This document shows, piece after piece, positions 29,801 through 63,175 of a stretch of DNA of 64,000 bases. Source of the DNA: Haliotis cracherodii (Eukaryota); NCBI RefSeq assembly GCF_022045235.1, contig NW_027266343.1, positions 44,702,001 to 44,766,000 on the forward strand, in the 5' to 3' direction. The position numbers were made by a program, and so were the translations under genes. Position 1 is the first letter of the stretch. Each line of letters begins with the position of its first letter. A model generated the notes under the pieces. The model did not search any database. It was not told where the DNA came from and saw only the letters and a program-made list of their open reading frames with translations.

Positions 29801-29818
29801 CACATTTACATTTATGAA

Positions 29819-30585: not shown

Positions 30586-33500
30586 TCATTTCAATTTAGG
30601 TAGGTATCTTTTCAAATATTCAAATATGTCTCTTATGTAGGTAAAAATGGACCAAGCCTCGCGTTTCCCAACTATGGCTTCATCGATCTCTTCCTTGTGA
30701 GATGAAGCTTTCGAGCCTTTACAGGGACTCTGGAATTCTTGTGTCAGCCAATCCAAGGCGTCTTTAATGCCTGACCTTGAGAGAATGCTGCATCCTATTA
30801 TGTTGGCCCCTGGAAACGTACAGTAAACTACATTTATAACGAAGACGCTTACAACGAATTGACGGATATAACGAACAGGATTTTGTCCCGGCCATTTGCT
30901 GTCTATTTTATCTAAAAGAATTGATGGATATAACGAACACGCTTATGACGAAATAACGAATATAGCGAACTCTCTTTGTGGTTCCATGTGTACTCTGACG
31001 GCGACAATGTTTACGTTAATTATGTTTATTATGAGTGCGGCGTTAAACAACAAACAAACAAAATGATGGAAAAGAAAGAAACCAGTATAGGAATAATTTT
31101 ATCTGCAACGTACTGTGAGCTTTGAGTATTTCCTGGAAGTCCATTGCCTCGGCAACCTCTGGTGCTGTCAAGGCGGCCGGCAGGTCCTGCTTGTTGGCGA
31201 GGACAAGGAAGGGGGTGTTCTTGAGTGCTTCATCCTGAGCGTCAAGTCTCAGTTCGGCCTGGGCCTCCTGTATACGGTCCCGGTCGTTGCTGTCTACCAT
31301 GAACAGGACGACGTCGATGTGTTTGTAGTTGTGCCGGGGATACTGGGGATGGGGAACAATCATCTCATGAACAGCGGCATGATGCGGCGGGGCGCTGCTC
31401 TCCAGCCGTCACATGCTACTACCATTATGCATAACAGTGTCTAGGCCTAACTTGGGAGTGGGGTGATTTGTTTCAAAGCAACGTTGAATAGTATTTCAGC
31501 GCATGCGTCAGCTTGATGTCCGATGAATGTCCGACGCGATTAAATCTTAGACGTTTACCGCTTTGGTGAAAACAACAAAAGTAGACTTGATGGCGGCATA
31601 CCAACAAGCATCATCAGGACACCAAACACACACGGTCTTGGTCAGAATAAGTCATATGCTTGTCTTAAAAGGCGACCACTGTGTCGACGTACAAGTGATG
31701 TTTGATTCAATCGTCTTAATACTGAAACTTCCCGAACCTAGCCGTTTTAGTCCGTTACATTTTATATAATTCCAAAGCTTATTTGTGTTGCTGTGTTATT
31801 TGAGCAGTTGATCTTAAACCATGTGACATAACTCACCACACGCCTTCTCTGCCCCCCGTCAATCAGTGTCAACTTGATGTTGTTGTAGACTAATGTCTTT
31901 TTGGCATCATCTAAAACATAAACCACCGTTATATCTGACATGGCATACAGTCACAGTTCAGGTATCTAACCCGTGAAGATCCAGGCTTGAGTTGTCTTCA
32001 GCAACCCGACTCACGGAATCGGATGGTCGGGTGATGCAAGTCATCATATCCCAATAGTGTAGATTGATGCCCATCGATTATTTACAGGCCGCCGCCATAG
32101 AGCTGGAATAGTGCTGAGTGGGGCGCAAATCAACAAACCCATTTCGGTATGTATACTACATTAACATCACACATCACGAATTGCTCTACACAGTTAATAC
32201 ATAACGAACGAGGTGCAATATAAATGAACGAAAAAACACGGGTTTTTGTTTTTTGAGTTTATTGGCATACACTGATTAATATTTCTTTCGAGTGAGTGAG
32301 TGATTGTGGTTTCACGCCGCTTTTAGCAATATTCCAGCAACATCACGACAGAGGACACCAGAAATGGGCTTCACACATTGTACCCATGTGGGGAATCGAA
32401 CCTGGGTCTTCGGCATGACGAGCAAACGCCTTAACCACTAGGCTACCCAACCGCCCCATAGTTCTTTCGATGTATCCTTGGACAGTTAAACTGTTTGATG
32501 AACCAGTGACCCTAGTGAAATGCAGACTTATAATTTATCATTTAAATACATTGTACCGCAAGGCCCTACTCACAGCGGGTTGGCGGCGTGCCGTGAAGTC
32601 GTGATGTTAGCAGGTAACACAGCGTGGATTTCCCTGCATTATCAAGCCCTGAGATATAAGGACACATGTGACTGGATAAAGCGACCCGTGATCACATTAA
32701 GTTCGTTTGGTCATTTGTATGGTATTATGATATCTTTATAATATACATGTAATGTGATAATATGTATATGCATTTGTACAAAGGGGTTGTCATTCTGAAT
32801 TTCCCGTTTGTAGTTTTCCATTTTCTTTCAAGAAACATTAAAAATAGATTAAAACAAGAACCATTACCATTACCATTAATTTTCTGCTTGTTCTGTTCTG
32901 CTTTTGTAATCAATATACAGACCCGTGAAGATCTAGGGTAGAATAGGTCTTCAGCAGCACATGCTTGCCGTAAAAGGTGACTATGCTAAGCGTAAAAGGC
33001 GACTCACGGGAGTGGGTGGTCAGTCTCGCTGACTTTGTTGATGCATGTCATCGTATCTCATCGATCAATCACTGGATTGTCTGGTTCAGACTTGATTATT
33101 TACAGACCGCCGTCATATAGCTGCAATATTGCTGAGAGCGGCGTTAAATAACAAACGAACTAAACAAAGGAATTGTTATCAATAATATAATATCGTTGCT
33201 ATAATGATTGCTTAAAGCAGTAATTATCAGTCGGGTGAAATAATCAGAGTTTTAATGAAAGGTCATAAGGTAACTGCTATTTCAATAGCCAAAAACAAGG
33301 AAGTTTAAGTGAGTCAGCCTGGTTAAAAAACACTGGTCTGAATGGTGTACGTAATTGTAAACCTTTATAGAATACCTTTAAACGTCACCTACTGCAATTT
33401 AAACTCAAATCAGCAGAAAGACTAAGTTTACGCATACAAAGATGGTAAATTGTTATAATTACTTTATAATTATGGAACATGCTACAGTCCCTTAACTAAC

Positions 33501-33927
33501 TAAATAGGATTCCTTTTAGCATTGTTCATGGATTAATAACACGTGATTTCTGTTCCACAAGACCTGGCTGTAAAACCTGCGAGCTTTAAACATTTTGGCG
33601 TGAAATTGTGGTCATGCGGAAATTGGAAAATAAAATATGTCACTTTTTTTAAAATGGAGCGGATATTGTTTGAAAAATAAATAATTATGGATAAAAGATA
33701 AACCCATGCTCAATCTTTCAAAGACACAGATCTAACTAGGTAGGCCAATTAATTATTATATTAAATCTAATATGTGACGTATTCAGGTCACGTGTTACTT
33801 TTGGTCTTCCAGTCTTTAAATACGACTCGATGACTATCTTGAAGGTAATAAGTACTATATACGTGCCATGCATGAGAACTACAACTTCCTTCCTTAGGCA
33901 TGGCAGCATACTAATATATTGCCCCAT
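30586..33927 (-). CDS. Arf-like small GTPase paralog A (highly divergent); exons 33927-33867, 32648-32574, 31910-31837, 31342-31114, 30809-30586
   Basis: MGQYIS start, G1 GLDNAGKST, altered G3 IDGGQR, FMVDSND, G4 ANKQD, C-terminal WSIFTYIRDIFEYLKRYLPKLK. The frame is open if intron 1 uses a GC donor. Confidence 0.8.
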
Positions 33928-35177
33928 TCCGTCTGTCGACCGTAGACTGTGTCAGCTGGAAGTTCAAGACACCGCAGTTTCGTAATGCGACCGGTCCTCA
34001 TCAATAGTACTTGAATATATCGCCAAGTAGGCTGGTGTGTACAAGTATATATATACCGACCCCACACCGTGGATTTGTTAACCTGGCACAAACATGCTGG
34101 GCGGACGTACGTCACGCTATTTATCGTTGACTGTTATTGATACCGGATTTTGATCTGGACTAGGTCAAAGTACGTTATCTACGTTAATCATGATCATAGA
34201 TGCAACATACGCTGTAACCAGACAAGGTGATAACGTTGAGTGAAGAAGAGTCTGGGGTTTGATTCAAACAATGTATTTTTTTTCCATTTGTGGCAGAAAA
34301 CATATAGATCTACTTTCTCTGTCCGTAACTATAAACAAGGACCGTATGGTGTGTTGCCCGGTATTACAGCTACAGTATTAAAAACAAGCATTGAATGAAA
34401 TGCAAACACGAATTGATCATGAAATTGTGAACGTCAATCGCCTCAATACATATTGACATTAGATTTTGTTTCTTTGTTGTTTAACACCGAACTCAGAAAT
34501 AGCCAAGCTATATGATGGCGGTCTGTAAATAATTGAGTCTGGACCAGACAATCCAGTGACTGATATCATGAGCATCGATCCAAACAATTGACATTCGATG
34601 ACATGCATCAACCAAGTCAGCGAGCCTGACCACCCGATCCCGTTAGTCGCCTCTTACGACAAGCATAGGCGACTATTACGGCAAGCATGGGTTGCTGAAG
34701 ACCTATTCTTTCCCGGATCTTCACGGCTCAAATAATAATGAGACAAATGAGTTTATTCGTTTAATCTTTCAGTTATATATTTTATTAGTTTGGCCATCAT
34801 TTTATCATGAACACCACGATGGTATATTCACAGAACCTGTCAGTTATAATGTCTTACCTCCATACACCCTTCGGCTTCAGTAATTAGAACACGCCATGTT
34901 GTGCATGTTGTTGTTTGTTGTTTAACGCCGCACTCAGCAATATTCCAGCGGTGATGCATTTGAGACTATGAACACTTGCATACACAGGTAAATAACAACT
35001 GAATGAGGTGTGTTATATTTTCCTTTCTTCCTGTACAGGAATAGCTTTTTGTTAGGTGGCAAACTACAAAAATATTATTTGCTTTTGACGGAGTTCGAGC
35101 CCACGGCCCACGAATTGCACTGGACTCTTGATCTCATGCCCTGAGCTTCAACACTTAATTGGGATAGAAGCTCTGCC

Positions 35178-38100
35178 AAGCTGGTTCAGTTATGTGAATG
35201 AAAACTCAAAGTGCACGATTGCAATGGACTTGGCATAGAAAACAAACAGCGCAAAGGTGACGGTAGTGGTGTTGTTTGTGGTGAAAGGGGGGTAATCGTG
35301 TTTGTACAAGAGTTAACACCCTTGCCTAAACTCCGTACACTGTCTCGCTTAAAACTTCACACACGGTGTGTTTCCCTGATCAAAGGGAGATAATAGCGCA
35401 CAGCAAATCAACAGTTACGTCCCTTGCGTCCAAGGGAGGTAAGACTGTTTTGAAAATGAAAACAGGATTTATAGTTACTTCCCTTTGACCATCAACGGCA
35501 CGGCTCAAACCCAAAATGCCATATCGCTGTAGTATGGAGGTAATGCAATAAGCCGGTTGGACCCGCATGCAACTGAAATAGTCGGTGTGCTACCCATGAA
35601 ACGACATCTATTTCCACTCTGCAGATATTCTGCTAATTACAAAACACTGTATGAGTGTATCAAACCGTTTACTGAGTTGTCTCCCTTTGACCTTCAACCG
35701 AAAACAAGCTCCTTCCAGCGGGTGGAACCTTCGTTACTCTTACGATATCATCACTGCCTCTAAGCTGGTTCAGTTACGTGTATTAAAACGTTCACGATTG
35801 CATATCCTTCCTCCTTTATGCGATTCTGGTTTCTTCTAAACATGGACTTGACATAGAAAACAAACAGCGCAGAGAACCATGCATGTGGTAGGCGACAGTG
35901 GTTTTGTTTGTGGTCAAAGGCAGGTAATCGTGTTTGTACATGAGTTTACTCCCTTGCCTAAACTCCGTACACTGTTTCGCTTAAAACTTCACACTCGGTG
36001 TGTTCCCCTGATCAAAGGGAGATAATAGCGCACAGCAAATCAACAGTTACGTCCCTTGCCTCCAAGGGAGGTAAGACTGTTTTGAAAATGAAAACAGGAT
36101 TCATAGTTACTTCCCTTTGACCATCAACGGCACGGCTCAAACCCAAAGAGTCATATCGCTGTAGTATGGAGGTAATGGAATAAGCCTGTTGGACCCGCAT
36201 GAAACTGAAATAGTCGGTGTGCTACCCATGAAACGACATCCATTTCCACTCTGCAGATATTCTGCTAATTACAAAACACTGTATGAGTGTATCAAACCGT
36301 TTACTAGGTTGTCTCCCTTTGACCTTTACCCGAAAACAAGCTCCTTCCAGCGGGTGGAACCTTCGTTACTCTTACGATATCATCGCTGCCTCTACGCTGG
36401 TTCAGTTACGTGTATTAAAACGTTCACGATTGCATATCCCTCCTCCTTTATGCGATCTTGGTTTCTTCTAAACATGGACTTGACATAGAAAACAAACAGC
36501 GCAGAGAACCATGCATGTGGTAGGCGACAGGGGTTTTGTTTGTGGTCAAAGGGAAGTAATCGTGTTTGTACAAGAGTTAACTCCCTTGCCTAAACTCCGT
36601 ACAGTGTCTCGCTTAAAACTTCACACACGGTGTGTTCCCTGATCAAAGGGAGATAATACCGCACAGCAAATCGAGAGTTACGTCCCTTGCCTCCAAGGGA
36701 GGTAAGACTGTTTGGAAAATGAAAACAGCATTCATAGTTACTTCCCTTTGACCATCAACGGCACGGTTCAAACCCAAAGAGTCATATCGCTGTAGTATGG
36801 AGGTAATGGAATAAGCCAGTTGGACCCGCATGAAACTGAAATAGTCGGTGTGCTACCCATGAAATGACATCCATTTCCCCTCTGCAGATATTTTGCTAAT
36901 TACAAAACAATGTATGTGTGAATGAAACCGTTTACTGAGTTGTCTCCCTTTGACCTTTACCCGAAAACAAGCTCCTTCCAGCGGGTGGAACCTACGTTAC
37001 TCTTACGATATCATCACTGCCTCTACGCTGGTTCAGTTACGTGTATTAAAACGTTCACGATTGCATATCCTTCCTCCTTTATGCGATCCTGGTTTCTTCT
37101 AAACATGGACTTGACATAGAAAACAAACATCGCAGAGAACCATGCATGTGGTAGGCGACAGGGGTTTTGTTTGTGGTCAAAGGGAAGTAATCGTGTTTGT
37201 ACAAGAGTTTACTCCCTTGCTTAAACTCCGTACACTGTCTCGCTTAAAACTTCACACACGGTGTGTTCCCCTCAAGCTCCTTCCCAGCGCGTGACACCTT
37301 CGTTACACTCTCGGTAACATCGCTGCCACCAGTGTGGGCGCGGCCATTTCAAGAATCTTGAAATTTGCCCTCCAACCCCATATGTAGTAACGTTTATACT
37401 TTTTTTTATGTCTCTGGGAATGCCATCATATTTCAATTTGAAAAGGTTTACGACTGACCATGTTTTCCAGATGAATTCACTTTGTTGTTTTGATAATCAG
37501 ATTGGTTCGAGATTGCAGACTAACGGAAAATCAACCAACTTCTCCCTTACATTCTTACTATATCAATAACACGATAGTTTTAATGAAACAGAAATTCAAA
37601 TTGACAAACGAAGAAAGTAATTTAGCAGCGATAAGTGTATTCGGCGTCACGACAGTCGTCACTTGTTTGTAAACATAACGGTCATTCGGTTGCGAGTTCA
37701 ACTCCAAGCATGGTTGTGGCCACCTATTCACAGTGGGGAGTTTTGACTGGTGGCAGCGATAGTATAGAGAGCTCCGGGAACGTACTATCGCTGTGAGGAG
37801 CTTGTGTTCCCCTGATCGAAGGGAGATAATAGCGCACAACAAATCAAGAGTTACATCCCTTGCCTCCAAGGGAGGTAAGACTGTTTGGAAATGAAAACAG
37901 GATTCATAGTTACTTCCCTTTGACCATCAACGGCACGGCTCAAACCCAAAAAGTCATATCGCTGTAGTATGGAGGTAATGGAAAAAAGCCTGTTGGACCC
38001 GCATGAAACTGAAATAGTCGGTGTGCTACCCATGAAACGACATCCATTTCCACTCTGCAGATATTTTGCTAATTACAAAAAACTGTATGTGTGTATGAAA

Positions 38101-38375
38101 CCGTTTACTGAGTTGTCTCCCTTTGACCTTTAACCGAAAACAAGCTCCTTCCAGCGGGTGGAACCTTCGTTACCCTTACGATATCATCGCTGCCTCTAAG
38201 CTGGTTCAGTTACGTGAAACACAACGTGCACGTTTGAATATTCATCCTTCTTTATGCGATTCTTTTTTCTTCTTCTAAAACTTGATTTGGCATAGAAAAA
38301 AAACAACATCGCAAAGGGCTCCCTTTTACTTCGAACCGAACAAGCGCCTTCCCAGCGCGCGACACCCTTTGGGGC
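35178..38375. repeat. About 632-bp tandem repeat, about 4 copies, interrupted by a MITE
   Basis: Equivalent positions at 35380, 36012 and 36643; the array resumes at 37805 after the insertion. Confidence 0.92.
37273..37804. mobile_element. MITE with CAAGCTCC...GGAGCTTG ends and 9-bp target-site duplication (Mutator-like); second copy 53932-54462; mini-derivative 63319-63411
   Basis: TGTTCCCCT on both sides (37264-37272 and 37805-37813); near-identical copy at 53932. Confidence 0.85.
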
Positions 38376-39687: not shown

Positions 39688-42600
39688 TCAACCCAATTTC
39701 GGTAGGAATGCTTTGAGGGACTCGAGGTTTCCTTTCATATAAGTGGACAGTGACCAGGGAGACTTTTCAGTCTTCTTCTCCGAGGTTGCATCTGTTTCCG
39801 GGTCACAAGGCTTAGCATCCGGGCTTTTCCTTGACGTCTCGATTTCACGAGACAACCAGTTCATGGCTTCATTCAGACCCTCTCCCGTGACGGCGCAGCT
39901 TCCCATAATGGTGGCTCCTGAAACACGTGTAATTGCTCGGTTGACTCACTCGAAGGATAAACTACAGGCAATTGGAATGAGGGATACCTTAAAAGAAATG
40001 GGATTTGGGATTGCTAATGATCTGACAATGTTTCAGAGAAAAGAACTCAACAGGATGAGAACTGAGAACCCCAACAAGCGGTATTACTATAAGGGGGAGG
40101 GTAGTGGGGAGTGAGAGACAACATGTAGAGCCACCAGCAGAGGAAAGGAGACAGCAGAACGTTTACACCCCCTCTAGTAAACGTAATGGACACCCAGGAA
40201 AGAGTACACAGCAGTCCAGACAGAGCAACAGACCATCCCCTAAATCTGGGAGGAGATAGGGGTGCGGCCAGGGCCTGGACGATTTTACGACACATCAACA
40301 TCAATTGTCCAAAACAACATATGATAATGAGATAGGAAATAACATTAGTTTTTTCATTTTGGAACATTTCAGAATTAACTTCAAACATTGAGGATACGGA
40401 TACAATGAATCAGTATTTTGGGCTGAATCATTTAAGAAAATAGATGAGGCACAAGCTGGTTTTAGAGAGGGGTACTCCACTATAGAGACCACGTTTTTGT
40501 GTTACATTCCTTAATTCAAACGTTATTTATCAAGTAATGGGGGGGGGGGGGGGGGGGGGGGAGAACTTTATGTGCTTTTTGTAGATTTTTCTAAAGCATT
40601 TGGCTCAGTTCACCGTGATAAACTTTGGGCCTTGCTAAAGTTACGAAGAGTAAGCAGCAAGATGTTGAAACTATTATCAAGTATCAATAACAAGTAAAGG
40701 CTTGTGTAAGAAGTAATGGTAAGTACTCAGAAGATTTTGAATGCAATGTAGGCGTTCGACAAGGATGTATATTAAGTCCTTTTCTCTTTACTTTCTTTAT
40801 TAACGAGCTGTCAGAGGAAATACTAAACAATTGTAAAGGTGGTATACAGCTACACCCAGATATTGTTAAAATATTTTTTCGTCTGTTTGCCGATGATGTA
40901 ACTTACTGATTTCGAGTACTGTACCCGGACTTCAAAGTCAGATAAATGTGCTGGAGCATTTTTGTGAACAATTTGGTTTAAGTGTTTACACAAAAAAGAC
41001 CAAAGTTATTGTATTTAAAAACGGGAGAAATGGTTGTACTAAGAGAGTTATCTGGACGTAGTTACAACCTATAAATATTTGGGAGTACATTTTTCTATTA
41101 AATTATCTTGGAATTTTCATTCAATACAGGCTGCAACACAAGCAAAGACAATTCTCTATGGGAAACTTAAACGTCTCAGATCTATTGAGAGTGTAAATTT
41201 TAATCTATTTCTTACATTTTTGACACAAAAATAAAGCCAATTCTACTATATGGGGCTGAGGTTTTTTGACTGAGCGTCCAAGTAAGTTACAACTAACTAT
41301 GAGTTTTCAGGATCTGCTTGAACTTCATTGCCTTGGCAACCTCTGGAACTGTCATGGCGCCTGGCAGGTCCTGCTTGTTGGCCAGTACGAGGAAGACGGC
41401 GTTCTTGAATTCCTTCTCCTCAAGCAAACGTTCCAGCTCGTCCCTGGCATGTTCCACGCGCTCCCGGTCGTTGCTGTCAACCACGAAGAGTACGGCGCCG
41501 GTGCCGGTGTAGTAGTAGTGATACAGAGGGCGCTGGAAAACATAGCAAATAGATTGAATATCGTTATATGCTCATATATACTTACATATAAAGTAGTCTA
41601 TTGACATTGATTAATAATGGATAATTCATTTATCTTGTATTAATCGGATATATCGGCGCCATTTTGTTTTGTTCATTTGGCCGTTAGCATATCAAGTTAG
41701 CACGTGCGTTCGTGTGTGTGCCGCGTGTGTGACTGTTAGCTTAACGCGTGTGTGCGCGTGCGTGTGCATGTTTGACTCTTGGCTTGAGGTGTGTATGTGT
41801 GTGCGTGTGTGTCTGTTAAGCTTAACGCGTGTGTGTGTGTGTGTGTATGTGCGTGTGTGTCTCTTAGTTTGACGTGTGTGTGCGTGCGTATGTGAGTGCG
41901 TGTGTGACCGACCAATTGATATTATGGAGGGGGCCTGGGATTTTATCGAAAAAAATAAATTGTCACAAAATGCTTGAAAAAAGATTATGCTTCAGATTAT
42001 TGAAAAAGAAGAAATTGTCGGCCAAAAATAAACAAGACGATTTATAACAAAAGTATTTAGAATTCCCCCGAATATCAAACGGTTGGTCCCTATCTGGCCA
42101 TGATTACGAGAGGACAGTTTACTGCAGCACCTAGTAGCTATGGCTGATGTTGGGTGTGTGGAACTTACAATGGCCGACCTTCCGCCAACATCCCAGGCTA
42201 TGATGTGTATGTTCCTGTAGGACACTGTCTCCTGAACAAGACCTGCAATGAAACCGTATCCAGGTGAGAATTCAGGTTGATCGCCTTCACATTTCTTCTG
42301 TACACAATCTGGGGGACTATGCTTGTTGTAAGAGGAGACTAACGGGATCGGGTGGTCAGGCTCGCTGACTTGGTTGATGCATGACATCGATCCCAATTGC
42401 GTGGATCGATGCTCATGATGTCAATCGCTGTATTGTCTGGTCCAGGCTCGATTATTTACAGACCGCTGGGATATGGCTGAGTGTTGTGTTTAACAACAAA
42501 CAAACGAAACACATTCTGGGGATTCATCTCCAGAACTCGCTGTAATAGTTTTAGCTTATGTGTTTATCAAAATCTGCGGAAGAGGATATGTTTTGTGGAT

Positions 42601-43589
42601 TGTCCTTATATGGCATATATACCCAGCTTGCTGAAAGGATTAACCTCATCCGTCATGACAATAACTCTTCCGACCTTGGTTCGTAGTTCGAATCCCATCA
42701 CAGAAGTGGGATACGTTGCGACCAATACACTTACACCACCCTCAGGCACGACACCCACCTATCGTTGGATTAGTTTCAACGACCTCCCCTAGTTTCAGCC
42801 TGTACAGTATTGTGGATTTCCCTGCAGCGTCCAGTCCTGTAAAGTAACACGACAGAAGCAAAATACTAGTTAACCACGGTATATGCATGTATGAATGTAT
42901 TCAACACGTACTGTTGGTTGGCATATACTTACGTAGGAGGGAGGATTCCCATTCAAAGAGAAAAAAAATCCAAAGTTTAAAAAGGTTTTAGATCACTAGT
43001 ATGAGGATTGTTAAAAAACAAAATTGGACAGTCACACTCATTTTTGAAATAGTGAATACGAAATATATGACGACTGCTTACTTTTGAGAAGAGTATTATT
43101 TTATAGTTTGATATATCATGTGATTTTGTTTGTTTGCTTGCTTGTTGTTTAACGCTGCAATATTCCAGCTATATGGCGACCGTCTGTAAATAATCGAGTC
43201 TGGACCAAACAATCCAGTGACTGATATCATGAGCATCGATACACGCAACTGGGATACGATGACATGCATCAACCAAGTCAGCGAGCCTGACCACCCGATC
43301 CCGTCAGACAAGCATAGTCGCCTCTTATGGCTAGCATGGGTTGCCGAAGACCAATTCTACCCCGGATCTTCTTAAATACACATAATATTAAATATGACCA
43401 AGAGCAACTATGATTAAAGGCATATCATACGAAAATCCGATAATAAGTCACTTTAAAATTCAAAAGAAAAAGAAGAACAAAATACAAAACCTTCAAGAGA
43501 TAACTAACTGTACACCTACCATGCATAATCAGCTTGACTTCGATCTTCTTGAACCATCTCTGTGTAGAGCTACTCAAGTGCTGCCCCAT
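39688..43589 (-). CDS. Arf-like small GTPase paralog B; exons 43589-43520, 42836-42759, 42242-42169, 41532-41298, 39917-39688
   Basis: [55 protein letters not shown] introns with phases 1,1,0,1. Confidence 0.92.
39925..41265 (+). mobile_element. Decayed LINE (ORF1-like piece plus reverse transcriptase fragments), antisense in intron 4 of paralog B
   Basis: ORF1-like [12 protein letters not shown]...[15 protein letters not shown]; RT motifs [36 protein letters not shown] with stops and frameshifts. Confidence 0.85.
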
Positions 43590-45146
43590 GTTGACAGTTG
43601 GGAGTGTCACGGACACGGAAACACAGCTACCTTGTCAGTTGTCACTGAGCGAATGACACAATCATCGCCAACAACGACTGTTACATATACCGCCCCCATC
43701 TCGTGAGTTTGTTTACCTGTCAAATCCACGGTGGCCGGAAGTACGTGTACAATATGCACAGTTTTATCATGGAAGCGAACGTATAATATCCGTGGAAGTG
43801 CGCTAGGATATATGCTTTGACATATTTTGTTTCCGAAACTGAAAGTTCTTTACAGATTCTGGGTACAATGTGAGAAGCCCATTTCTGGTGTCCCCCGTCG
43901 GAATGTTGCTGGAATATTGCTAAATGCGGCGTAAGAACATACTCACTCACTCTTTACAGATTCTGTGGGCTTCAAGTTTGTTTGTTTGTTTGTTTGACCA
44001 CCCGACCCCGTTTGTCACCTCTTATGACAAGCAGTCATGTTTAACAACAGAGGATTGTTCGCTTGGCATGGTGGGTGCCCTGAGCGAGCGTGTTGTAAAA
44101 AGGAAATTCAGGCAATGAATATTTATTCCCAAGAGGTGAATATGTGATACAAATAACTCTTTGAATGTGTTGTTTACACCTGAGAATACAAATCGATTCC
44201 TATGCCGATATATTGGTTCATCAACCGGTTCATATAACAAGTACAAGATGTACACCATAATCCGTATTCAACCATGAAGGAGGGAGTACTCTGTCAATAT
44301 GTCCTGACATAGTCGCCAACAAATCAAAGAATATCTTCTTATTGCCGATGCAAGATTAAACCTTTCCTCGCTCACTATCAAATCGAAGACAAAACAGTTT
44401 TCTCATTATTATCCAGTATTAACTCCTCTCGGCGAGTCTAGAAGGGCACCCTATTAAACTTGTCACTCTAACGTTGGAGGGCTTCAGCGAGGCATCAACA
44501 TAATTCTGTTACACATAAAGCCCTTACACACAATTACAACCACAGATACAGGATTTGGGAAAAAGAGGGGTGCGTTTTATAATTTGGCAATTTTCATGAG
44601 TAAGTTATAGTGTTGTAATTAGTGTACTTCTAGTATGCCCTGTCACCTTCAAAGCTTCCAAATGTATGGATGTTGTGTAGGTTTTATGTTTCTAAAACGG
44701 CCGGGGTGGGGTATGTATTCTACTCAACGTTTGAAAGGGATAAACATGCCGTTCTGATTAAAAATACATTTGACATATGTGAATCAGTTTTGTTTATCAT
44801 GGAAAGAAAAATATCCCTGTTAAAAGTTGAATAGTATATATAGAACATGCCGTATTGACAATTCTGATAACTGTGCAGTCTCACTCCATCCCCTGGCTTT
44901 TGCCGCTCCCTACCTACTACATCAGGCTGCAGCAGTGGTATGGTGTAATCCTAGACCCCCCCTCATATAGTTCATATAACCAGAGAGCATAAAATAGGCT
45001 GTGCAGTACAAGCGCATAGCTAAGATGACTGTCCCTCAATCTTATGGTCTCTGATATAACATAACATGTGTGTTTTATTTTCTTAAATTAAACCAATACC
45101 TGTGATCACAGTATGGGACTGTGCCCGTTATCGTACATGTAGGTGT

Positions 45147-48828
<3,682 letters not shown>

Positions 48829-49208: not shown

Positions 49209-49209
<1 letters not shown>

Positions 49210-49252: not shown

Positions 49253-49253
<1 letters not shown>

Positions 49254-49587: not shown

Positions 49588-49858
49588 GAGGCCGACCATT
49601 TGATATTCATATTGTTGCTGCCACAAATATTACATTGCTGAAATGCATGGTTTGTTTTTTTAGAAACAAATATTATGGCGCATAGTTTTAATGAAATTAA
49701 ATAGTTTTAAAAAATATCTGGTTTTGCAGCTGTACCTAAAAAAAAATCTGGCGTGGATACAAAATCTCAGCCCACCACCCCCGCACCCCACCCCACCCCA
49801 CCTCCACACCACCCCATCCCACAGCCAACCTCCCGAATATCAAATGGTCGGTCCCTAA
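49588..49858. mobile_element. Short MITE; related copy at about 41906-42092
   Basis: CCGACCATTTGATATTC and GAATATCAAATGGTCGG inverted ends. Confidence 0.65.
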
Positions 49859-55638: not shown

Positions 55639-58600
55639 CTACCACAATCTTGGCAGCAAGCTTTTGAAAGTTGTAACCGTCCCCTTCACATAAGATGAGA
55701 ATGTCCAGGGTTTCTTGTCACTATCTGAGCCTTCCTGGGATGGAGCCTTATTAGTTTTGTCCTTCGTTTTCCCAGTTTCAGATGAATACCAGGACTGGAA
55801 CCAGTAGCCAGACTTCGGCACCAATTCTTCACTCAGCCAATCCAGTGCCTTAAGCAAGTCACCTTGACCCTCAGGCATCACTGCTGAACATCCAAATATG
55901 TTCATTTCTGAAAAAGAAATGTCACTTTTCCATCAATATAGACCACAATATGATATTCAGTCAGCATGGATATAATTGTCATTGTTGTCATGATCACTAT
56001 TTGTCATGAGCACTTAAAACATAAGCAGTAAGTTTGCCTCTTAATAATGGTTATTCCAGTTAGATTTCTAGGGCCCCAAGTACCCGTGGATACTTGTACA
56101 TTGTATGAGAGACAAGATGGACACTGAGAAGGCAGAAAATTCAATTTAAACATTTAACAGCTCAGTGTAGATCATATTTAGCACTACAATGACTAATTGC
56201 AGATCTACATACATGTAGATACTTTTTATATATACACTTCCAGAATTTAACTATATTACTGATTGCTATATCGTTATGCTTTAAGGTCGATATTAACACT
56301 TCAAACCAATGACCCCCCCTAGATTCTGGGGAAGAATAGGTTCGCAGTGCCAAAAGCTTGTCTCCCTTGGGTCACCAGAGTAGAAAATTCACTCCAAATT
56401 CACAATTTACTAAGGAGGCATGTAGAGCAAACACTCACCGTAGATATTTTGACAGCTTATGAGTGAAACTTAATTTCTCAGTTAGTGTGCACATGTTTTG
56501 GCAAAGCGATGAACAAGTGTGTATTTAATACATACTTCCCCCAATATCTAATATGTAGCGACATTCCAATGAAGACGTCTCAGAGCTATGATGTCAGCCA
56601 ACAAGGTCACAATGCAGCGACGTCATAGTGAACGAAACACTTTGGCGCCGTTCTCATTCATGGCCCATGACATCATACTGCTTTTATCACAACACACAGG
56701 CTTAGACCGATGACATAATGTCATACCACACTGCTTGTATGATAACAAACGGACTTAGATCCCTGACATAAGCCCATACTGCTTCTATGACAACGGACAA
56801 ACAGACCCATGACATAAGCTCATACTGCTTGTATGACAACGGACAGAGCGTCCCATGACATAAGCTCATACTGCGTGTATGACAACGGACAAACAGACCC
56901 ATGACATAAGCTCATACTGCTTGTATAACAACCAACAGAGACCTATGACATAAGCTCATACTGCTTGTATGACAACGGACAGAGCGTCCCATGACATAAG
57001 CTCATACTGCTTGTATGACAACGGACAATCAGACCCATGACATAAGCTCATACTGCTTGTATGACAACGGACAAACAGACCCATGACATAAGCTCATACT
57101 GCTTGTATGACAACCAACAGAGACCTATGACATAAGCTCATACTGCTTGTATGACAACGGACAAACAGACCCATGACATAAGCTCATACTGCTTGTATGA
57201 CAACGGACAATCAGACCCATGACATAAGCTCATACTGCTTGTATGACAACGGACAAACAGACCCATGACATAAGCTCATACTGCTTGTATGACAACGGAC
57301 AGAGAGTCCCATGACATAAGCTCATACTGCTTGTATGACAACGGACAGAGCGTCCCATGACATAAGGTCATACTGCTTGTATGACAACGGACAGAGTCCC
57401 ATGACATAAGCTCATACTGCTTGTATGACAACAGACAGAGAGACCCATGATATAAGTTCACACTGCTTGTATGACAACGGACAGAGCGTCCCATGACATA
57501 AGCTCATACTGCTTGTATGACAACAGACAGAGAGTCCCATGACATAAGCTCATACTGCTTGTATGACAACAGACAGAGCGTCCCATGACATAAGCTCATA
57601 CTGCTTGTATGAAAAGGGACAGAGAGTCCCATGATACAAGCTCATACTGCTTGTATGACAACAGACAAACAGACCAATGACATAAGCTCATACTGCTTGT
57701 ATGACAACCAACAGAGACCTATGACATAAGCTCATACTGCTTGTATGACAACAGACAAACAGACCCATGACATAAGCTCATACTGCTTGTATGACAACGG
57801 ACAAACAGACCCATGACATAAGCTCATACTGCTTGTATGACAACAGACAAACAGACCCATGACATAAGCTCATACTGCTTGTATGACAACCAACAGAGAC
57901 CTATGACATAAGCTCATACTGCTTGTATGACAACGGACAAACAGACCCATGACATAAGCTCATACTGCTTGTATGACAACAGACAAACAGACCCATGACA
58001 TAAGCTCATACTGCTTGTATGACAACCAACAGAGACCCATGACATAAGCTAAGCTGACATTGCCTGCAGATCCTGACTAAAACTAAAACAGAAACACACT
58101 CACTTTTCCCAGAAGGTCTTTGCTCACATAATTTGTTGTAGTTCATTTTTTCCTTGATTTCCTCCACACTCATGGCCGAGCCCAAGTCCTGCTTGTTGGC
58201 CAGGAGCAAAATCACAGCCTCTCCCAGCTCTGGTTCCATCACCAATCTCTTCACCTCATCAGCCATCTCTTCAAGCCTGTCCTGATCAGTGCTGTCTATG
58301 ACAAACATGAGTGCCGATGCTCCAGGGAAGTAGTGTCGGTACAAGCTCCGCTGGAAAAGAGGAAGAGAGGAGGAGGATTGAACAAACTACTGCTTCTTTG
58401 GTATCTTCAGACAAGGACCATACTTGATTAGGGGTGACTATTGGTCTGGAAATCACTATTGCGATAATTATTGATAGTTTTCAGTGTATCATTTTAGATG
58501 GATTTTAGAGTTGAATTAAACCTTGGAACTGTAGTTTCCTTTGAATGTGATAACCATAACAACAATAGAAAGTAAAGTTCGAGATACGACTGATTTGTTT

Positions 58601-61600
58601 TTTCTTTACCCTAATAATTTAAGAAAAAGAAACTTCAACATTAGCATGTGTAAATTACTACCACTCATGATCAAAAGAAAAACAAATTTGAACAGCATTG
58701 CATGTACAATCGAAACTATCAATATTCCTAATTGAAATCAATACTATTGATCGTCAACTAATTACACAATCGATTTATTGACTTTATGTGCTTACCAATA
58801 GCAATTTATCGATATTTCGATTTATCGTGACACTTTATACTTGATACTGTTAATCTGGACAGTTTTGCAAGCAAGAAAGTATTGCAAAATGTGCGCATGA
58901 CACACACTTGCAATAGTTTTATGATGCAGTCATTTTTCAGACCAACAAGAAACAATGATGTAAAGATGCATATTTCTTTTGTTTACTTCTACACATTGTC
59001 AAATCAGCCAATGCATGATTGATTAAATAATATACTCAATTACACATTGTCCTCAGTGTCAAAAGTTTAATCAGGAAAGTTCACTTAGCTGTCACATCTC
59101 ATCAAATTGTTTACATGCCACTGACTAGTCTAGACATAAGCCAGCCAGTTCTTTACTGTTGAATAAACCCTACTCCAACTACAACCACACATGCACCTAT
59201 AGTCAAAGAATTACTGACTGACCTTGGGTTATCATTTCACCGAAGGGTTAAAATCTACAGTATTTGTAGAAATACCTCACAATCTACTTTACAAATACTG
59301 TAGATTGTACTTCAAATGTCTTTCTACAATTGTTAAATTATGTGGTGTCGTTGCTGGAGTGTGTAAATACATTATGACGTCACAGTTGTAATTTATGACG
59401 TCATAAGTATGACGTCATTCATATATCATTGTCAGTTACACTGAAGAGCTGTCATGAGAAAGTCAAAGTACTATGTCTGAAACTGATAAAAACAAGATGT
59501 TGGACTAACATGGTCTTTGTTTTTTATATATTACATGTACACTGAGTGAACATTCGTATGCCTCGTTTTAGTGTGTATGCATATATATACTCTTGTACCA
59601 TCATTTGTCGTTTTTCAGAGAAATAAACTGAAACTGAACCAAGAAGCTTCCTATTTATATACTACTCAAAAGAAGTTAAGGATCACCAGATTCTTTCATA
59701 ATGGTAAAACAAATCTGTCACGACATGAGAGATTACCTATAATTTTTCATGGCGCCACCCTTTCAGTACTTGTACGATGTACAGTTTGGACAAGCTGCAT
59801 CAGACATGTCATATGTAACCATAGTAACATAAGTTTAATGCTGAACATTTCTTCTTTCAATATTTGGGAAAATATAATGTGGCCAAAATTATATCTTGCC
59901 CAATACTTATTTTCATTGTTTTATATACCCAGTTCATATTCTATAGTATTCAGCCATGATCTAATACTTGCTTCAGAATTCCTTGTCTCAAAAGCCATTG
60001 TGATGCAGGAATAAACATAAACTGCACAGAGGGACTGTTATTGTCATTGTCTATTCATTTCAGAAATTAGGGCTGGAACGGAGAACTCGGGTACTCGGGT
60101 GGGTCCTGTCGTTAGTCACCTGATATATTGTTTAATGACAAAAATTCACTATAGCTCAATGGTTAAACTACAAGTCACTAATGTTCGCCTTTCCGTCTTA
60201 CGATGCACACATTCCTTTTGACTTGTATATGTCTGACTACAGATAAAGCTTCAGTTAACTTCAGTGTACGCACGATCTGATCGTTTGATACATGTACCTA
60301 AAGAGTTTTGGCCAGGGCTGCGGTAAAACAATTCCCAATCAGACATTTTGTTCTCAACTCTTGAGACCTGCAGTGGGTACCCGGGTAGGGTCGGGTAGTA
60401 GGGGGTCAGGTATCTAGGTAGTAAATCTGGACTCGTCCCAACCCTATCAGAAATCAGTAACCTAAACAGTGAAACCATCAAGTCTTTCACTTTAGGCAAG
60501 GAAACAAACAACTGCCTCGTCAAAATGGATTACAGTGAAAACCTAATTCATTCAACAATCCACATTCCCGAAAAGCCCTCAACATGCAATTTTTTTCTAC
60601 ATGGTAAATGTGTTTGACAATTGTCCAGAGCAATGTTATTAAAACTACTTACAACTTTGTCCCTCCCGCCGACATCCCACGCTGCTATACTGATATTCTT
60701 ATGTGTAAAATGCTCCACATTAAAACCTGAAATAAAACACAGCGTATAAATGTGCATGGTTATGTTACGGGTTCTTACATGACATGCAAAAAATATCACT
60801 AATACCTATCATCACTGATCATGTCAACATACAATATGTACAAGATAACATGGGCGTCACAATAAAACATGCTGTGTAGATGCTCTAATGGGATCTGCTT
60901 TTCTGACCCAGAGTTATGACCCGTGAAGATTCGAATTGGTCTTCAGCAACCAATGCTTGTTGTAAGAGGTGACTGAAGGGACTGGGTAATCAGACTCGCT
61001 GACTTGGTTGCTGCATGTAATCGTGTCCCAATTGCGTGGATCGATGCTCATGATATCAATCACTGGATTGTCAGGTCCAGACTGGATGATTTACAGACCA
61101 CTGTCATATAGCTAGAATATATCTGAGTGTGGCATTAAACACCAAACATTAACATGATTAAACCAAACTCACTCTCCAAGATAACCAAAGTCATAACCAT
61201 GATAACGTATCTACATAGCATTATCATGATTATATTTACACAATAAACATAGCCTTGTACTTGCCTACTGTTAGAGTGTTGATATTCTGAGACAAAAGTT
61301 GAGTAAATTAATATCACTACTGCTACTTACCTATCAAAATACTAAACAAACAAGACAAAAACTGAGTAGGGCTCACTAATACCCTCGACTTCGATTCCAA
61401 CATACATGATGTATTTCTGAGTTCAAAACATGAAATCAAACTTTGCACTGCACCTCTCCTATTGGCATAGAAACTGTATACCCAATTGAAAAGAATCCAT
61501 GAAGTATTTTTTCAGTTATAGCTTGCATAAATGTAAAAGTAAAAAAAATATTCTAATTTCAAGAAATGCAAACACTGGTAAAGAATCATTTTTTTCAGAA

Positions 61601-63175
61601 AATACACATATCAAAATTTAACTTTGCACTGCATCTCTTCTATTAGTATGGAAACTGGTCCCTAAATTTGAAAATAATCCATGCAACAGTTTTCAAGTTA
61701 TGGATTACATATATGTGCATGTAAAAAAATTAATTAAAAGCTGCACCTCTCCTATAGGTATAAAAGGTGTTTACCAAATTTGAAAAAAATCTATGAAGTA
61801 GTTTTCAAGTTATCATGGTTATAGGTCACACACAAAAATGTCCTCAGAAGGAGGGAGGAAATTCCTTGGTATAACAATATACCCCTGTGCCCCTTTAGGT
61901 CGGGGCACAAAAAACATATCCAAACATACACACATACCAATTGTAGGAATGGTTGTCACCACTTCTCCTTGCGTTAGGATGTACAGAATGGTTGTTTTTC
62001 CAGCAGCATCAAGACCTAATGCAAGAAAGAAGATTGTGTTGAACATGTTAAAGATGACAGACCAAAGCAGATAGGCATGGAATGCACTTTTCTATTCTAC
62101 AGCCTCATGTTGATCTTCAATCAGGTGACTTCTAGTTCTGTTTGTAACCTTGGTAATGTCCCCGGCTTTGAAGAATTCCAAGGGAACATGGTTATACAGT
62201 AGTGAAAAGCAGCCAATTAGAGGTTGGCTCTAAAATAAAATTAGCAATCCTCCCCTTATTCTGTTCACATCTGTGACAAGAAGGGATAGGGATTAGCTGA
62301 GTTTGGTCAAATATATGGTATTCAAATGCAGTGGGGAGAAATCATTGCCTGTAGCTGACATGAGTGATGAGGTTCAACAGTAGCCTAGTCAGTATGTTAT
62401 TGTCTTGCATGTTAATTGGGTCCCAACAGAGCTCTCAGCCAGTCAGACACAATCACGGTTCTGGCTATTGTTCACCCAGCCCTTATTGGAGGGCATGGCT
62501 CATTTATAAAACTTACCCTCAGATTCAGCTCATAAAGTGCAAGTATCATCATGGTTTGGTACAACTTTGCAGAACTGGATACATTTTGTAAAATTGGAAA
62601 TTCAAATATCGCATTGGCACGTAAATAAGGTTAATTTACTCCTTAGCAGTGGCTATCAATTTAAAAACATCAACGTAAGCAGGGGCTTTATATATAAAGG
62701 CTCGATATACAAAGGAAATACAGTAGGGTAACGCAAATATTAGCACTATGAAAATGAACATTAAACTGAGCACACTAACCATTCCAACTAAAAGTTTCTC
62801 ATAACGTCAAATTAAATAATATATTTTTATGTAACAAATTTTTAAAAAAAAACCCCACAGAACTGTCAACTGTCATGATCTATGGAGAAAGGGCCAGGGG
62901 TCTAAATCGTCAAAACTTGACCCTACTGTTGAGCTAGCCAAGAGCCGCGATACCTGGCATTGGGCCAGTGCAGGAAACATTTTCTTGACTATCAGATCTC
63001 GCCGAATAGTCTTGCCCCACATGCTCGGCTAATCATGAACAAGGGGCATCGGTAGTTGTGCCATCTGAAATGAATGTTCTAAGTATGTAAAACAGCAGAT
63101 CTACGCACCAAATATAATAATTTTCATATCTTTCTTCCACCCGAGTGTCGCAAGTTTACAGAGAGAATGTCCCAT
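55639..63175 (-). CDS. Arf-like small GTPase paralog D; exons 63175-63109, 62015-61938, 60726-60653, 58350-58104, 55907-55639
   Basis: [57 protein letters not shown]. Same intron positions as A-C. Confidence 0.93.
56663..58050. repeat. 44-46-bp minisatellite, about 30 copies, in intron 4 of paralog D
   Basis: Unit CCATGACATAAGCTCATACTGCTTGTATGACAACGGACAAACAGAC with variants. Confidence 0.96.
61348..61916 (+). mobile_element. Helentron/HINE-like non-autonomous element with internal degenerate repeats
   Basis: AAACAAGA start, three degenerate TGCACCTCTCCTAT...GAAAA.AATCCATG repeats, and a 3' hairpin TGTGCCCC...GGGGCACA followed by an A run. Confidence 0.55.

What the first reader, a model, noticed from the sequence alone, without database searches (positions are those of the whole stretch)
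30586..63175. Tandem array of four atypical Arf-like GTPases, all with Arg at the catalytic switch-II Gln position
Seen: four co-oriented 5-exon genes with identical intron phases. G3 reads WDVGGRSAI (B), WDVGGRGAI (C), WDVGGRDKV (D) and, ungapped, IDGGQRRRV (A). G1, G4 and the N-terminal Gly2 are kept. Established: Arf/Arl proteins have WDxGGQ, and loss of this Gln (Arf1 Q71) blocks GAP-stimulated hydrolysis. Inference: a lineage-expanded subfamily that is GTP-locked or uses another hydrolysis mechanism. Its position next to a TLR and its rapid divergence hint at an immune or stress membrane-trafficking role, but adjacency alone is weak evidence. DVGGR-type Arf-likes may already exist unstudied in other invertebrates.
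Basis: partly seen in the sequence, partly recalled or inferred. Interest (0 to 1): 0.82.

Follow-up and report, generated by a model that had tools for sequence, protein, structure and literature searches.

The report
Abalone tandem array of Arl20 GTPases
The four neighbouring genes are real and encode Arf-like GTPases with arginine in place of the catalytic glutamine. They belong to Arl20, an animal-wide family named in 2021 whose function is unknown, and the arginine is a hallmark of that whole family rather than something new in abalone.

Summary
Four co-oriented (minus-strand) five-exon Arf-family genes lie at 30586-63175, with intron phases 1,1,0,1. Copies B, C and D read WDVGGR; copy A reads IDGGQRRRV. 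Spliced contigs from public runs show that B and C are transcribed and spliced exactly as modelled.

The interpretation needs correcting. This is not a new lineage-specific subfamily. The genes match Arl20, a holozoan Arf-derived clade defined by Vargova et al. 2021 (PMC8358228). That paper's own sequences, from sponge, annelid, limpet, rotifer and amphioxus, already carry WDVGGR plus a C-terminal extension. Its main text never contains the word 'glutamine'.

The gene structure fits the published Arl20 description: three introns absent from the same genome's Arf1-like gene, and one shared with it. What is specific to Haliotis is the expansion. The window holds four copies. A fifth, Arl20a-type gene lies on contig C15, and a broken copy of D lies on C1.

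Copy A is a degenerate pseudo-GTPase or pseudogene candidate. Its G3 motif is non-canonical, its intron 1 has a GC donor, and RefSeq models do not use its MG exon.

The mechanism is inferred only: either a long-lived GTP state, or a built-in arginine acting like LRRK2 R1398. The immune link rests on adjacency alone. The scan's earlier notes hold no matching finding on other DNA.

The parts
30586..33927 (-). Gene A, 220 aa model. It is a divergent Arl20 paralogue. Exons: 33927-33867, 32648-32574, 31910-31837, 31342-31114, 30809-30586. G1 is GLDNAGKS, switch I is PPTRYD, G3 is IDGGQRRRV, G4 is NKQD, G5 is CSI. The intron-1 donor is GC.
   Evidence: Exons 2-5 are 100% identical to H. cracherodii XP_071089765.1 (P0047) and differ at 5 of 200 residues from the H. 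rufescens orthologue. A sits on a very long branch of 1.33 in the tree. Expression was not tested.
31846..31848 (-). Codon AGA (Arg) of A. In the ungapped alignment it lines up with the switch-II Arg of B-D. The preceding codon is Gln, at the position of the invariant DxxG Gly.
39688..43589 (-). Gene B, 228 aa. Exons: 43589-43520, 42836-42759, 42242-42169, 41532-41298, 39917-39688. G3 is WDVGGRSAI.
   Evidence: Spliced contigs in X10 (503 nt) and X5 (491 nt) join exon 4 (41370-41532) to exon 1 plus 5' UTR (43519-43707). The 151 nt between them matches exons 3+2.
42178..42180 (-). Arg codon (AGG) of B at the position of the Arf1 Gln71 equivalent.
44215..48828 (-). Gene C, 228 aa, with a 3' UTR reaching at least to 44215. 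Exons: 48828-48765, 47739-47662, 46695-46622, 46406-46172, 45382-45147. G3 is WDVGGRGAI. Cys6 follows Gly2.
   Evidence: Model. Joints at 45381/2-46171/2 and 46406-46622 have GT..AG ends on the minus strand. X2 contig 20 (1556 nt) covers the 3' UTR, exon 5 and exon 4, plus 152 nt that equal exons 3+2. C is 96% identical to H. rufescens P0206.
46631..46633 (-). Arg codon (AGA) of C at the catalytic-Gln position.
55639..63175 (-). Gene D, 244 aa. Exons: 63175-63109, 62015-61938, 60726-60653, 58350-58104, 55907-55639. G3 is WDVGGRDKV. Cys6 follows Gly2. Intron 4 holds a 1.3 kb satellite with a 46 bp unit (56757-58050).
   Evidence: Of the two candidate exon-4 donors, only the one at 58104 keeps the frame open into exon 5. 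Expression was not tested.
60662..60664 (-). Arg codon (AGG) of D at the catalytic-Gln position.
39688..39860 (-). C-terminal extension of B, with equivalents in A, C and D. It is a linker of about 30 residues followed by a conserved end, PW[ST][LF]S[ST]Y[MV]KG..[LF]K[AS][FL]LP[KR]L.
   Evidence: Alignment. In the AlphaFold2 model of the C orthologue the linker has pLDDT below 50 and residues 210-221 form a short helix at pLDDT about 51. The hydrophobic moment exceeds shuffles clearly only in A and marginally in C and D.

Best explanation
The region holds a Haliotis-lineage tandem expansion of Arl20. Arl20 is an Arf1-derived small GTPase clade of Holozoa. It has been lost in vertebrates, was named in 2021, and has no assigned function.

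Shown here:
- There are four five-exon genes.
- B and C are transcribed and correctly spliced.
- All four keep the P-loop and NKQD.
- B, C and D keep an intact DxxG followed by Arg instead of the catalytic Gln. This Arg is invariant in 22 of 22 aligned family members from sponge to amphioxus.
- Every member carries a C-terminal extension of about 50 residues.

Inferred:
- The proteins are N-myristoylated on Gly2. C and D may also be palmitoylated on Cys6. They would act as membrane-bound nucleotide switches.
- With Arg in place of Gln, the usual Arf mechanism is unlikely. In that mechanism Gln positions the attacking water and an ArfGAP supplies an arginine finger.
- Most likely the switch-II Arg contacts the gamma-phosphate itself, as a built-in sensor or finger like LRRK2 R1398. 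That would give slow or GAP-independent hydrolysis and a long-lived GTP state.
- Copy A has lost a canonical G3 and probably no longer cycles. It is a pseudo-GTPase or a decaying gene.
For: - Family identity: the exons hit Pfam Arf.
- Published Arl20 sequences: Vargova et al. define Arl20 by three specific intron positions plus one shared with Arf1/Arf4. Their sequences read WDVGGRDK[IMA] in LgiArl20b, CteArl20, BflArl20a/b, AquArl20a and AdaArl20a/b. The variants are WDIGSRDKI in LgiArl20a, WDVGSRSKI in AquArl20b and MDVGGGEKM in CinArl20. The sequences shown all carry C-terminal extensions.
- Database relatives: an HMMER search with exon 4, and a word search with family proteins, returned DVGGR proteins with similar tails from Gigantopelta, Pecten, Ylistrum, Potamilus, Sinanodonta, Solemya, Leptochiton, Ptychodera, Branchiostoma and Oscarella. 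R69 is invariant in alignment A2.
- Tree: the window genes fall in a starred gastropod clade inside a mollusc DVGGR group. A tree with all 30 DVGGR-type rows held as one clade has a higher likelihood than the free tree, p-AU 0.65.
- Gene structure: the same genome's Arf1-like gene on C9 shares only the PTIG|FNVE phase-1 intron. The C15 paralogue, which is the evident LgiArl20a orthologue, has the same exon 2-5 boundaries and phases.
- Expression: spliced contigs exist for B and C.
- Constraint: B-C dN/dS is 0.29.
- Precedent for Arg at the Q61-equivalent position in an active GTPase: LRRK2 R1398.
Against: - No biochemical data exist for any Arl20, so the mechanism is pure inference.
- The published Arl20 intron positions could not be read, because Supplementary Figure 11 is illegible in the held text. 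Identity of positions is therefore shown only within this genome.
- The named Arl20 sequences from the paper could not be placed in my tree because they have no reference. The link runs through evident orthologues: P0211 for BflArl20, and the C15 gene for LgiArl20a.
- Deep branches are unresolved. The mollusc DVGGR group has only 81/77 support. In the free tree two environmental DVGGR proteins sit beside canonical Arfs.
- Arg at this position also occurs in some Arl17 and plant Arl13 sequences, so the motif alone does not define Arl20.
- Expression of A and D was not tested.
Confidence: 0.8

Rival explanations
1. These are GTP-locked Arfs. Arg simply abolishes hydrolysis, so the proteins are constitutively GTP-bound. 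They would then be controlled by expression level, membrane targeting or the C-terminal tail rather than by a GTPase cycle, as in other small GTPases that have lost hydrolysis.
For: - The catalytic Gln is absent in every family member.
- A conserved tail could provide another layer of control.
Against: - G1, G3 (DxxG), G4, switch I Thr and the interswitch are all conserved in B-D. This fits a working nucleotide switch.
- At the equivalent LRRK2 position, R1398L, designed to mimic the GTP-locking Ras Q61L, increased GTPase activity instead. LRRK2 with Arg at this position hydrolyses GTP.
- No biochemistry exists either way.
Confidence: 0.35
2. This is a new, mollusc- or abalone-specific immune Arf subfamily that arose next to a TLR.
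For: - A TLR (LRR + TIR) lies at 21604-23628.
- PARP14-like genes were noted just upstream of the window.
- The expansion is recent and divergence is relatively fast.
Against: - The family with the same motif, tail and gene structure is found from sponges to amphioxus and was already named.
- A fifth paralogue sits on another contig.
- Adjacency to one TLR is not evidence of shared function.
- No expression data under pathogen challenge were examined.
Confidence: 0.1
3. The array is largely decaying duplicates. Only one copy is functional, and the Arg motif in the others is inherited baggage.
For: - A has a broken G3, altered switch I, a GC donor and a very long branch.
- RefSeq models of the A orthologue use other first exons that would remove strand beta-1.
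- A D-like copy on C1 is a clear pseudogene.
Against: - All four reading frames are intact.
- B and C are spliced mRNAs in runs from several studies.
- B-C dN/dS is 0.29, well below 1.
- A differs from its H. rufescens orthologue at only 5 of 200 residues, fewer than C at 9 of 228.
Confidence: 0.15

Closest known systems
Arl20 (Vargova et al. 2021, Genome Biol Evol, PMC8358228)
   Same: - The G3 motif is WDVGGR.
- RPL[YWFLM]RHY[YF] follows it.
- N-terminal Met-Gly is present, and Cys6 matches LgiArl20b.
- There is a C-terminal extension of about 45-70 residues.
- There are four introns, of which one is shared with Arf1.
- The family is present in molluscs (Lottia has two copies).
- Automatic annotation calls these proteins 'ADP-ribosylation factor-like'.
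   Different: - Haliotis has expanded the b-type gene to a tandem array of four.
- B and C changed the residues after the Arg from DKI to SAI and GAI.
- Copy A has a degenerate G3.
- The paper's main text never contains the word 'glutamine', so the Gln-to-Arg change appears not to be discussed there.
Canonical Arf1 / Arf6
   Same: - Identity is about 50-55% over the GTPase core.
- The best solved-structure matches are Arf1 entries, E 1e-59.
- The fold is the same in the AlphaFold2 model.
- The PTIG|FNVE intron is shared.
- There is an N-terminal Gly2.
   Different: - Gln71 is Arg.
- Trp78 is Tyr in B-D.
- Three introns differ.
- There is an added C-terminal tail.
LRRK2 ROC domain (Arg1398 at the Ras Q61-equivalent position)
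   Same: Arg sits directly after DxxG in switch II of an otherwise intact G domain. It was recently proposed to act as a gamma-phosphate sensor (PMC13345514). LRRK2 still hydrolyses GTP (PMC4781896).
   Different: It belongs to an unrelated GTPase family (Roco), is part of a multidomain kinase, and hydrolysis there is linked to dimerisation. The preprint states that Arg at this position is unique to LRRK2. Arl20 would be an independent second case.
TRIM23 / ARD1 Arf domain
   Same: It is an Arf1-derived metazoan paralogue with a basic residue (Lys, WDVGGKHKL) at the Gln position.
   Different: TRIM23 has N-terminal RING, B-box and coiled-coil domains and an exon structure like Arf1. The genes here are single-domain, carry Arg, and have a different exon structure.
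Arl17 and plant-type Arl13
   Same: Some members carry Arg at the same position, for example WDIGGRDKI in Adineta and P. micra Arl17 and DLGGRK in Selaginella and Physcomitrium Arl13.
   Different: Arl17 is defined by one to three copies of a novel C-terminal domain of about 100 residues, and among animals it is known only from rotifers. Arl13 is a ciliary GTPase with a long coiled-coil tail.

Membership tests
ARF family (Pfam PF00025) | Arf-type G domain with G1 GxxxxGK[ST], switch I Thr, DxxG, NKxD and the interswitch | tested here: met
   Exon translations hit PF00025 at E 1e-6 to 3e-23. The motifs are read. In copy A the DxxG is not canonical.
Arl20 | Three clade-specific intron positions plus one shared with Arf1/Arf4 (PMC8358228) | tested here: inconclusive
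   A-D have four introns. They lie in the Gly codon before LDAAGK (phase 1), after PTIG (phase 1), after the three residues following the Arg (phase 0), and 24 residues after NKxD (phase 1). Only PTIG|FNVE is shared with this genome's Arf1-like gene on C9. The LgiArl20a-type gene on C15 has the same exon 2-5 boundaries.
Arl20 | Groups with Arl20 sequences and apart from Arf1/4/6 in phylogeny | tested here: inconclusive
   A-D sit in a starred gastropod clade (96/91) within a mollusc DVGGR group (81/77) that includes the C15 LgiArl20a-type gene. The backbone is unresolved. Holding all 30 DVGGR-type rows, including Branchiostoma and Oscarella, as one clade gives a better likelihood than the free tree, p-AU 0.65. 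The paper's named sequences, and Arl19, Arl1, Arl5 and TRIM23 references, were not in the tree.
Arl20 | Shared sequence hallmarks of the published members: WDVGGR, and a C-terminal extension beyond the G domain | tested here: met
   The published sequences were read. B, C and D, and 22 of 22 aligned relatives, have the Arg. All carry tails. This hallmark is my reading of their data, not a criterion stated in the paper.
Canonical Arf (Arf1/Arf4/Arf6) | Catalytic Gln in WDVGGQ, and the Arf1-type exon structure | tested here: not met
   Arg replaces Gln. Three of the four introns are absent from the Arf1-like gene of the same genome.
TRIM23 | N-terminal RING, two B-boxes and a coiled coil fused to an Arf domain with Lys at the Gln position | tested here: not met
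   The genes start with MG directly before the G domain. The contig for B reaches 5' UTR upstream of the ATG. The residue is Arg, not Lys.
Arl17 | One to three copies of a novel C-terminal domain of about 100 residues | not tested
   The tail here is only about 50 residues and is predicted to be a disordered linker plus one short helix. No model of the Arl17 domain was available to compare against.

The most novel reading that the evidence does not exclude
Arl20 is an ancient, animal-wide class of Arf GTPases in which a switch-II arginine has replaced the catalytic glutamine for more than half a billion years. This would make it an independent parallel to LRRK2 R1398. It would imply a self-contained, ArfGAP-independent way of sensing or hydrolysing GTP on membranes. 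The abalone expansion beside TLR and PARP14-like genes would then reflect recruitment of this switch into innate-immune membrane traffic, with copy A turned into a nucleotide-independent pseudo-GTPase.
Probability: 0.15. Interest if true: 0.7.

Novelty: new member of a known kind. Interest (0 to 1): 0.42.

Why it matters
Arl20 is one of the few broadly conserved animal small GTPases with no known function. It is absent from vertebrates, flies and nematodes, so it has escaped study. The data here, and the 2021 paper's own supplement, show that an arginine at the catalytic-glutamine position is the family's constant feature. That gives a concrete, testable biochemical question. It also provides a second natural example beside LRRK2 of Arg at the Q61-equivalent site. 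For abalone genomics the practical results are correct gene models, corrected names (RefSeq calls them Arf1-like or Arl1), and a record of a recent four-gene expansion with one degenerate copy.

Tried and rejected
I therefore could not fetch Arl20 loci from Branchiostoma, Oscarella, Pecten or H. rufescens. This ruled out comparing intron positions across phyla, testing synteny of the array, and computing between-species dN/dS.
- Illegible figure: Supplementary Figure 11 of PMC8358228 (intron map) is illegible in the held text.
- Flooded search: the profile word search was flooded by canonical and tandem-fused Arf1 predictions. P0161 from Amphimedon turned out to be two fused Arf1 domains, not Arl20.
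- Exon 1 of the C15 paralogue was not found within 6 kb upstream.
- Joined models not sent to search tools: the spliced A-D proteins were never sent to a database or folding tool. Searches used exon 4 by reference and database protein ids. The joined models were used only inside scripts for alignment, dN/dS and trees. The paper's Arl20 sequences have no reference, so they were read but not entered into any computation.
- Relic exons rejected: tblastn of all four models finds only the 20 modelled exons in the window.
- D exon-4 donor rejected: the donor at AAATTAT|GTGAGC would create a TAA stop at the junction with exon 5.
- Saturated comparisons: dS is saturated for every pair involving D, so those ratios are not usable.
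- Structure: AlphaFold2 gave no confident placement of the tail, so I draw no docking hypothesis from it.
- Literature: a search for abalone Arf expression gave nothing specific to these genes.


Full report
**1. What is in the sequence**

The degenerate pattern for WDVGGR occurs three times on the minus strand, at 42179-42195, 46632-46648 and 60663-60679. Shuffles give 0.03 expected matches. I assembled four co-oriented minus-strand genes, A to D, from stop-to-stop frames, splice consensus and mutual similarity. Each has five coding exons and intron phases 1,1,0,1. The coordinates are listed under 'parts'.

All acceptors are AG. All donors are GT except the intron-1 donor of A, which reads ATG|GCACGT. 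The single exons match Pfam Arf PF00025 with E-values between 1e-6 and 3e-23.

G1, NKQD and Met-Gly are present in all four models.

Pairwise protein identity is:
- B-C 72%
- C-D 50%
- B-D 45%
- A-C 48%
- A-D 32%

All four end in a shared extension of about 50 residues. Its last 20-odd residues are conserved: PW[ST][LF]S[ST]Y[MV]KG...LP[KR]L. No further relic exons lie in the window.

**2. Which genome, and are the genes used**

Exons 2-5 of A are 100% identical to a partial RefSeq protein of Haliotis cracherodii (P0047, XP_071089765.1). C is 96% identical to an H. rufescens protein annotated 'ADP-ribosylation factor 1-like' (P0206). The window is therefore abalone, most probably H. cracherodii.

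I laid Logan contigs of four public runs on 41200-47199. The run kind was only guessed to be RNA. The contigs show intron-skipping joints with GT..AG ends on the minus strand at exactly my boundaries. For gene C these are 45381/2-46171/2 and 46406-46622. One 1556-nt contig covers a 3' UTR from 44215, exon 5 and exon 4, plus 152 nt, which is the summed length of exons 3 and 2.

For gene B, contigs of 503 and 491 nt join exon 4 to exon 1 plus 5' UTR. The 151 nt between them corresponds to exons 3+2. These contigs come from runs carrying three organism codes and three studies. B and C are therefore transcribed and spliced as modelled. A and D could not be tested, because only one laying call was allowed.

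**3. What family it is**

I ran an HMMER search of 1.84 billion representative proteins with exon 4 of C, given by reference. No hit was more than about 62% identical. However, 13 of the 150 best hits carry Arg after D.GG. Aligned, these also carry C-terminal extensions of about 45 residues. Cluster look-up names Gigantopelta, Ylistrum, Potamilus, Ptychodera and Haliotis as sources. A profile word search added Pecten, Sinanodonta, Solemya, Leptochiton, Branchiostoma lanceolatum, Oscarella and H. asinina. In the 22-sequence alignment A2 the Arg is invariant.

The literature search led to Vargova et al. 2021 (PMC8358228). That paper defines 'Arl20' as a holozoan group that is probably derived from Arf1 and absent from vertebrates. 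The group is recognised by three specific intron positions plus one shared with Arf1/Arf4.

The paper's supplementary sequences read as follows:

| Sequence | G3 region |
|---|---|
| LgiArl20b, CteArl20, BflArl20a/b, AquArl20a, AdaArl20a/b | WDVGGRDK[IMA] |
| LgiArl20a | WDIGSRDKI |
| AquArl20b | WDVGSRSKI |
| CinArl20 | MDVGGGEKM |

The sequences shown all have C-terminal extensions. LgiArl20b begins MGQFMCKLWKAKEV, close to C, which begins [16 protein letters not shown]. The main text of the paper never contains the word 'glutamine'. In the held library no other paper uses the name Arl20 for this GTPase.

**4. Membership tests I could run**

Gene structure.
- The Arf1-like gene of the same genome (contig C9) has introns after PTIG, after NTQG and after ANKQ.
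- Only the first of these is shared with A-D, at the same phase, G|GT.
- The other three introns of A-D are absent from that gene. They lie in the Gly codon before LDAAGK, after the third residue following the Arg, and 24 residues after NKxD.
- This is the 3+1 pattern the paper describes.
- A fifth paralogue, E, lies at G000:C15:1042128-1049407. It reads WDIGSRDKIRPLFRHYYKGTDAVVFVIDSHDRERLDELNYDVIKPA..., which is plainly the orthologue of LgiArl20a.
- E has the same exon 2-5 boundaries and phases. The structure therefore predates the split between the a and b types.

Phylogeny (45 rows, IQ-TREE with LG+C20).
- A-D with the H. rufescens and H. asinina proteins form a starred clade at 97/90.
- Adding Gigantopelta gives another starred clade at 96/91.
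- A mollusc DVGGR group that includes E has weak support at 81/77.
- The deep backbone against canonical Arfs is unresolved. The paper reports likewise that the relationship of Arl20 to Arf1 could not be conclusively inferred.
- Constraining all 30 DVGGR-type rows to one clade gives a tree 4.3 log-likelihood units better than the free search, with p-AU 0.65.

Limits of these tests.
- The paper's intron figure is illegible in the held text.
- The paper's sequences have no reference and so were not entered into computations.

Taking these together, I file the genes under Arl20 with about 0.85-0.9 confidence.

**5. The expansion and its members**

A genome-wide pattern search combined the G3 motif with the conserved phase-0 donor. 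It finds the three window genes, E on C15, and one more locus on C1.

The C1 locus is a partial duplicate of D. Exons 2, 3 and 5 are 97-98% identical at the DNA level. Exon 4 carries a TAC-to-TAG stop and a 19-bp deletion. No exon 1 was found in the fetched stretch. It is a pseudogene.

The genome therefore has at least five intact-looking Arl20 genes plus one dead copy, against two in Lottia.

Constraint by the Nei-Gojobori method:
- B versus C: dS 0.55, dN 0.16, ratio 0.29. Core and tail give similar values.
- A versus B or C: ratio about 0.43, with dS near 1.
- Pairs involving D are saturated.

These values show purifying selection. The selection is much looser than expected for canonical Arfs; that comparison rests on my general knowledge and was not measured here.

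**6. Copy A**

Copy A differs from the others in several ways:
- G3 is IDGGQRRR. Either the invariant DxxG Gly is Gln (ungapped reading), or the D-to-G spacing is one residue short.
- Switch I reads PPTRYDA instead of IPTIGFN.
- RPLY is shortened to YP.
- G5 is CSI.
- The intron-1 donor is GC.
- The tree branch leading to A has length 1.33.

RefSeq models of the H. rufescens orthologue start MVALSSHMCPYIS- or MAKEGS- before GLDNAGKS. They do not use the MGQYISML... exon, and without it the protein would lack strand beta-1.

On the other hand, the reading frame is intact in two species. A differs from its H. rufescens orthologue at only 5 of 200 residues, fewer than C at 9 of 228.

A is best described as a pseudo-GTPase candidate or a gene early in decay. 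I cannot decide between the two here.

**7. How it probably works**

Shown:
- The G domain is intact in B-D.
- Arg is fixed at the Gln position across the family.
- The closest solved relatives by sequence are Arf1 entries, at E 1e-59.
- In an AlphaFold2 model of the C orthologue the core is confident. Residues 181-212 have pLDDT below 50. Residues 210-221 form a short, low-confidence helix.
- The helix segment is clearly amphipathic only in A and marginally so in C and D.

Inferred from established Arf biochemistry:
- Gly2 myristoylation, plus possibly Cys6 palmitoylation in C and D, would anchor the proteins to membranes. The paper's predictors flag C6 of LgiArl20b as palmitoylated.
- With Arg where Gln normally orients the attacking water, and where an ArfGAP inserts its own arginine finger, the canonical GAP mechanism is unlikely.

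Two readings remain. One is a long-lived GTP state. The other is an intrinsic arginine that contacts the gamma-phosphate.

LRRK2 is the relevant precedent. Its ROC domain has R1398 at the Ras Q61-equivalent position and still hydrolyses GTP. The R1398L mutant was designed to lock GTP but increased hydrolysis instead (PMC4781896). A 2026 preprint proposes R1398 as the gamma-phosphate sensor and calls Arg at this position unique to LRRK2 (PMC13345514). Arl20 would be an independent second case.

TRIM23 carries Lys at the same position. Some Arl17 and plant Arl13 sequences carry Arg.

**8. Immune context**

- A single-exon TLR with LRR and TIR domains lies at 21604-23628.
- A fucosyltransferase lies at 16248-17414.
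- Earlier notes of this scan place PARP14-like genes just upstream of the window. I did not check those notes.

This context is suggestive, but it is adjacency only. The fifth paralogue lies elsewhere in the genome. No challenge expression data were examined. I give the immune reading about 0.1.

**9. Verdict**

The family is already named Arl20, and the Arg belongs to the family rather than to abalone. New here are:
- the abalone gene models
- the four-gene expansion
- the degenerate copy A
- the D pseudogene on C1
- the explicit statement that Arg-for-Gln is the invariant hallmark of Arl20

This is a new member of a known kind, of moderate interest.

Noticed in passing
G000:C15:1042128-1049407 (+), loci L001 and L008: A fifth Arl20 paralogue lies outside the window. 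It reads WDIGSRDKI and is the evident orthologue of Lottia LgiArl20a. Its exon 2-5 boundaries and phases match the window genes. Exon 1 was not found within 6 kb upstream.
   Followed up: partly
G000:C1:34583001-34593000 (-), locus L010: A partial duplicate of gene D. Exons 2, 3 and 5 are 97-98% identical at the DNA level. Exon 4 has a TAC-to-TAG stop and a 19-bp deletion, and no exon 1 was found in the fetched stretch. It is a dispersed Arl20 pseudogene.
   Followed up: yes
window 56757-58050: A 1.3-kb satellite with a 46-bp unit, about 28 copies, about 90% matches. It fills much of intron 4 of gene D, starting directly after exon 4.
   Followed up: no
window 42200-42600, 43000-43400, 43800-44000, 45400-46000, 46800-47200: Short interspersed repeats in the introns and between B and C. 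Thousands of contigs from every run laid match them. The loose-end consensus (…GTCACGCCGAAGACCCGGGTTCGATTCCC…) looks tRNA-derived, suggesting a highly expressed SINE family.
   Followed up: no
window 35597-38033 (-): At least four copies of a repeat spaced about 630 to 1170 bp apart. Each opens with the same frame, MGSTPTISVSCGSN..., and they lie between genes A and B.
   Followed up: no
window 21604-23628 (-) and 16248-17414 (-): A single-exon Toll-like receptor of 674 aa (LRR_8, LRRCT, TIR) and a GT10 fucosyltransferase of 388 aa lie downstream of the array.
   Followed up: partly
G000:C12:54809201-54810700 (-), locus L006: A single-exon Arl4/Arl19-like gene of 185 aa. It has Lys at the catalytic-Gln position (WDVGGKDNM) and a basic C-terminus. 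It is another Arf-family member of this genome without the Gln.
   Followed up: no
window 29438-30168: Two adjacent tandem arrays lie just downstream of the stop codon of gene A. One has a 20-bp unit (18 copies) and the other a 45-bp unit (8 copies).
   Followed up: no
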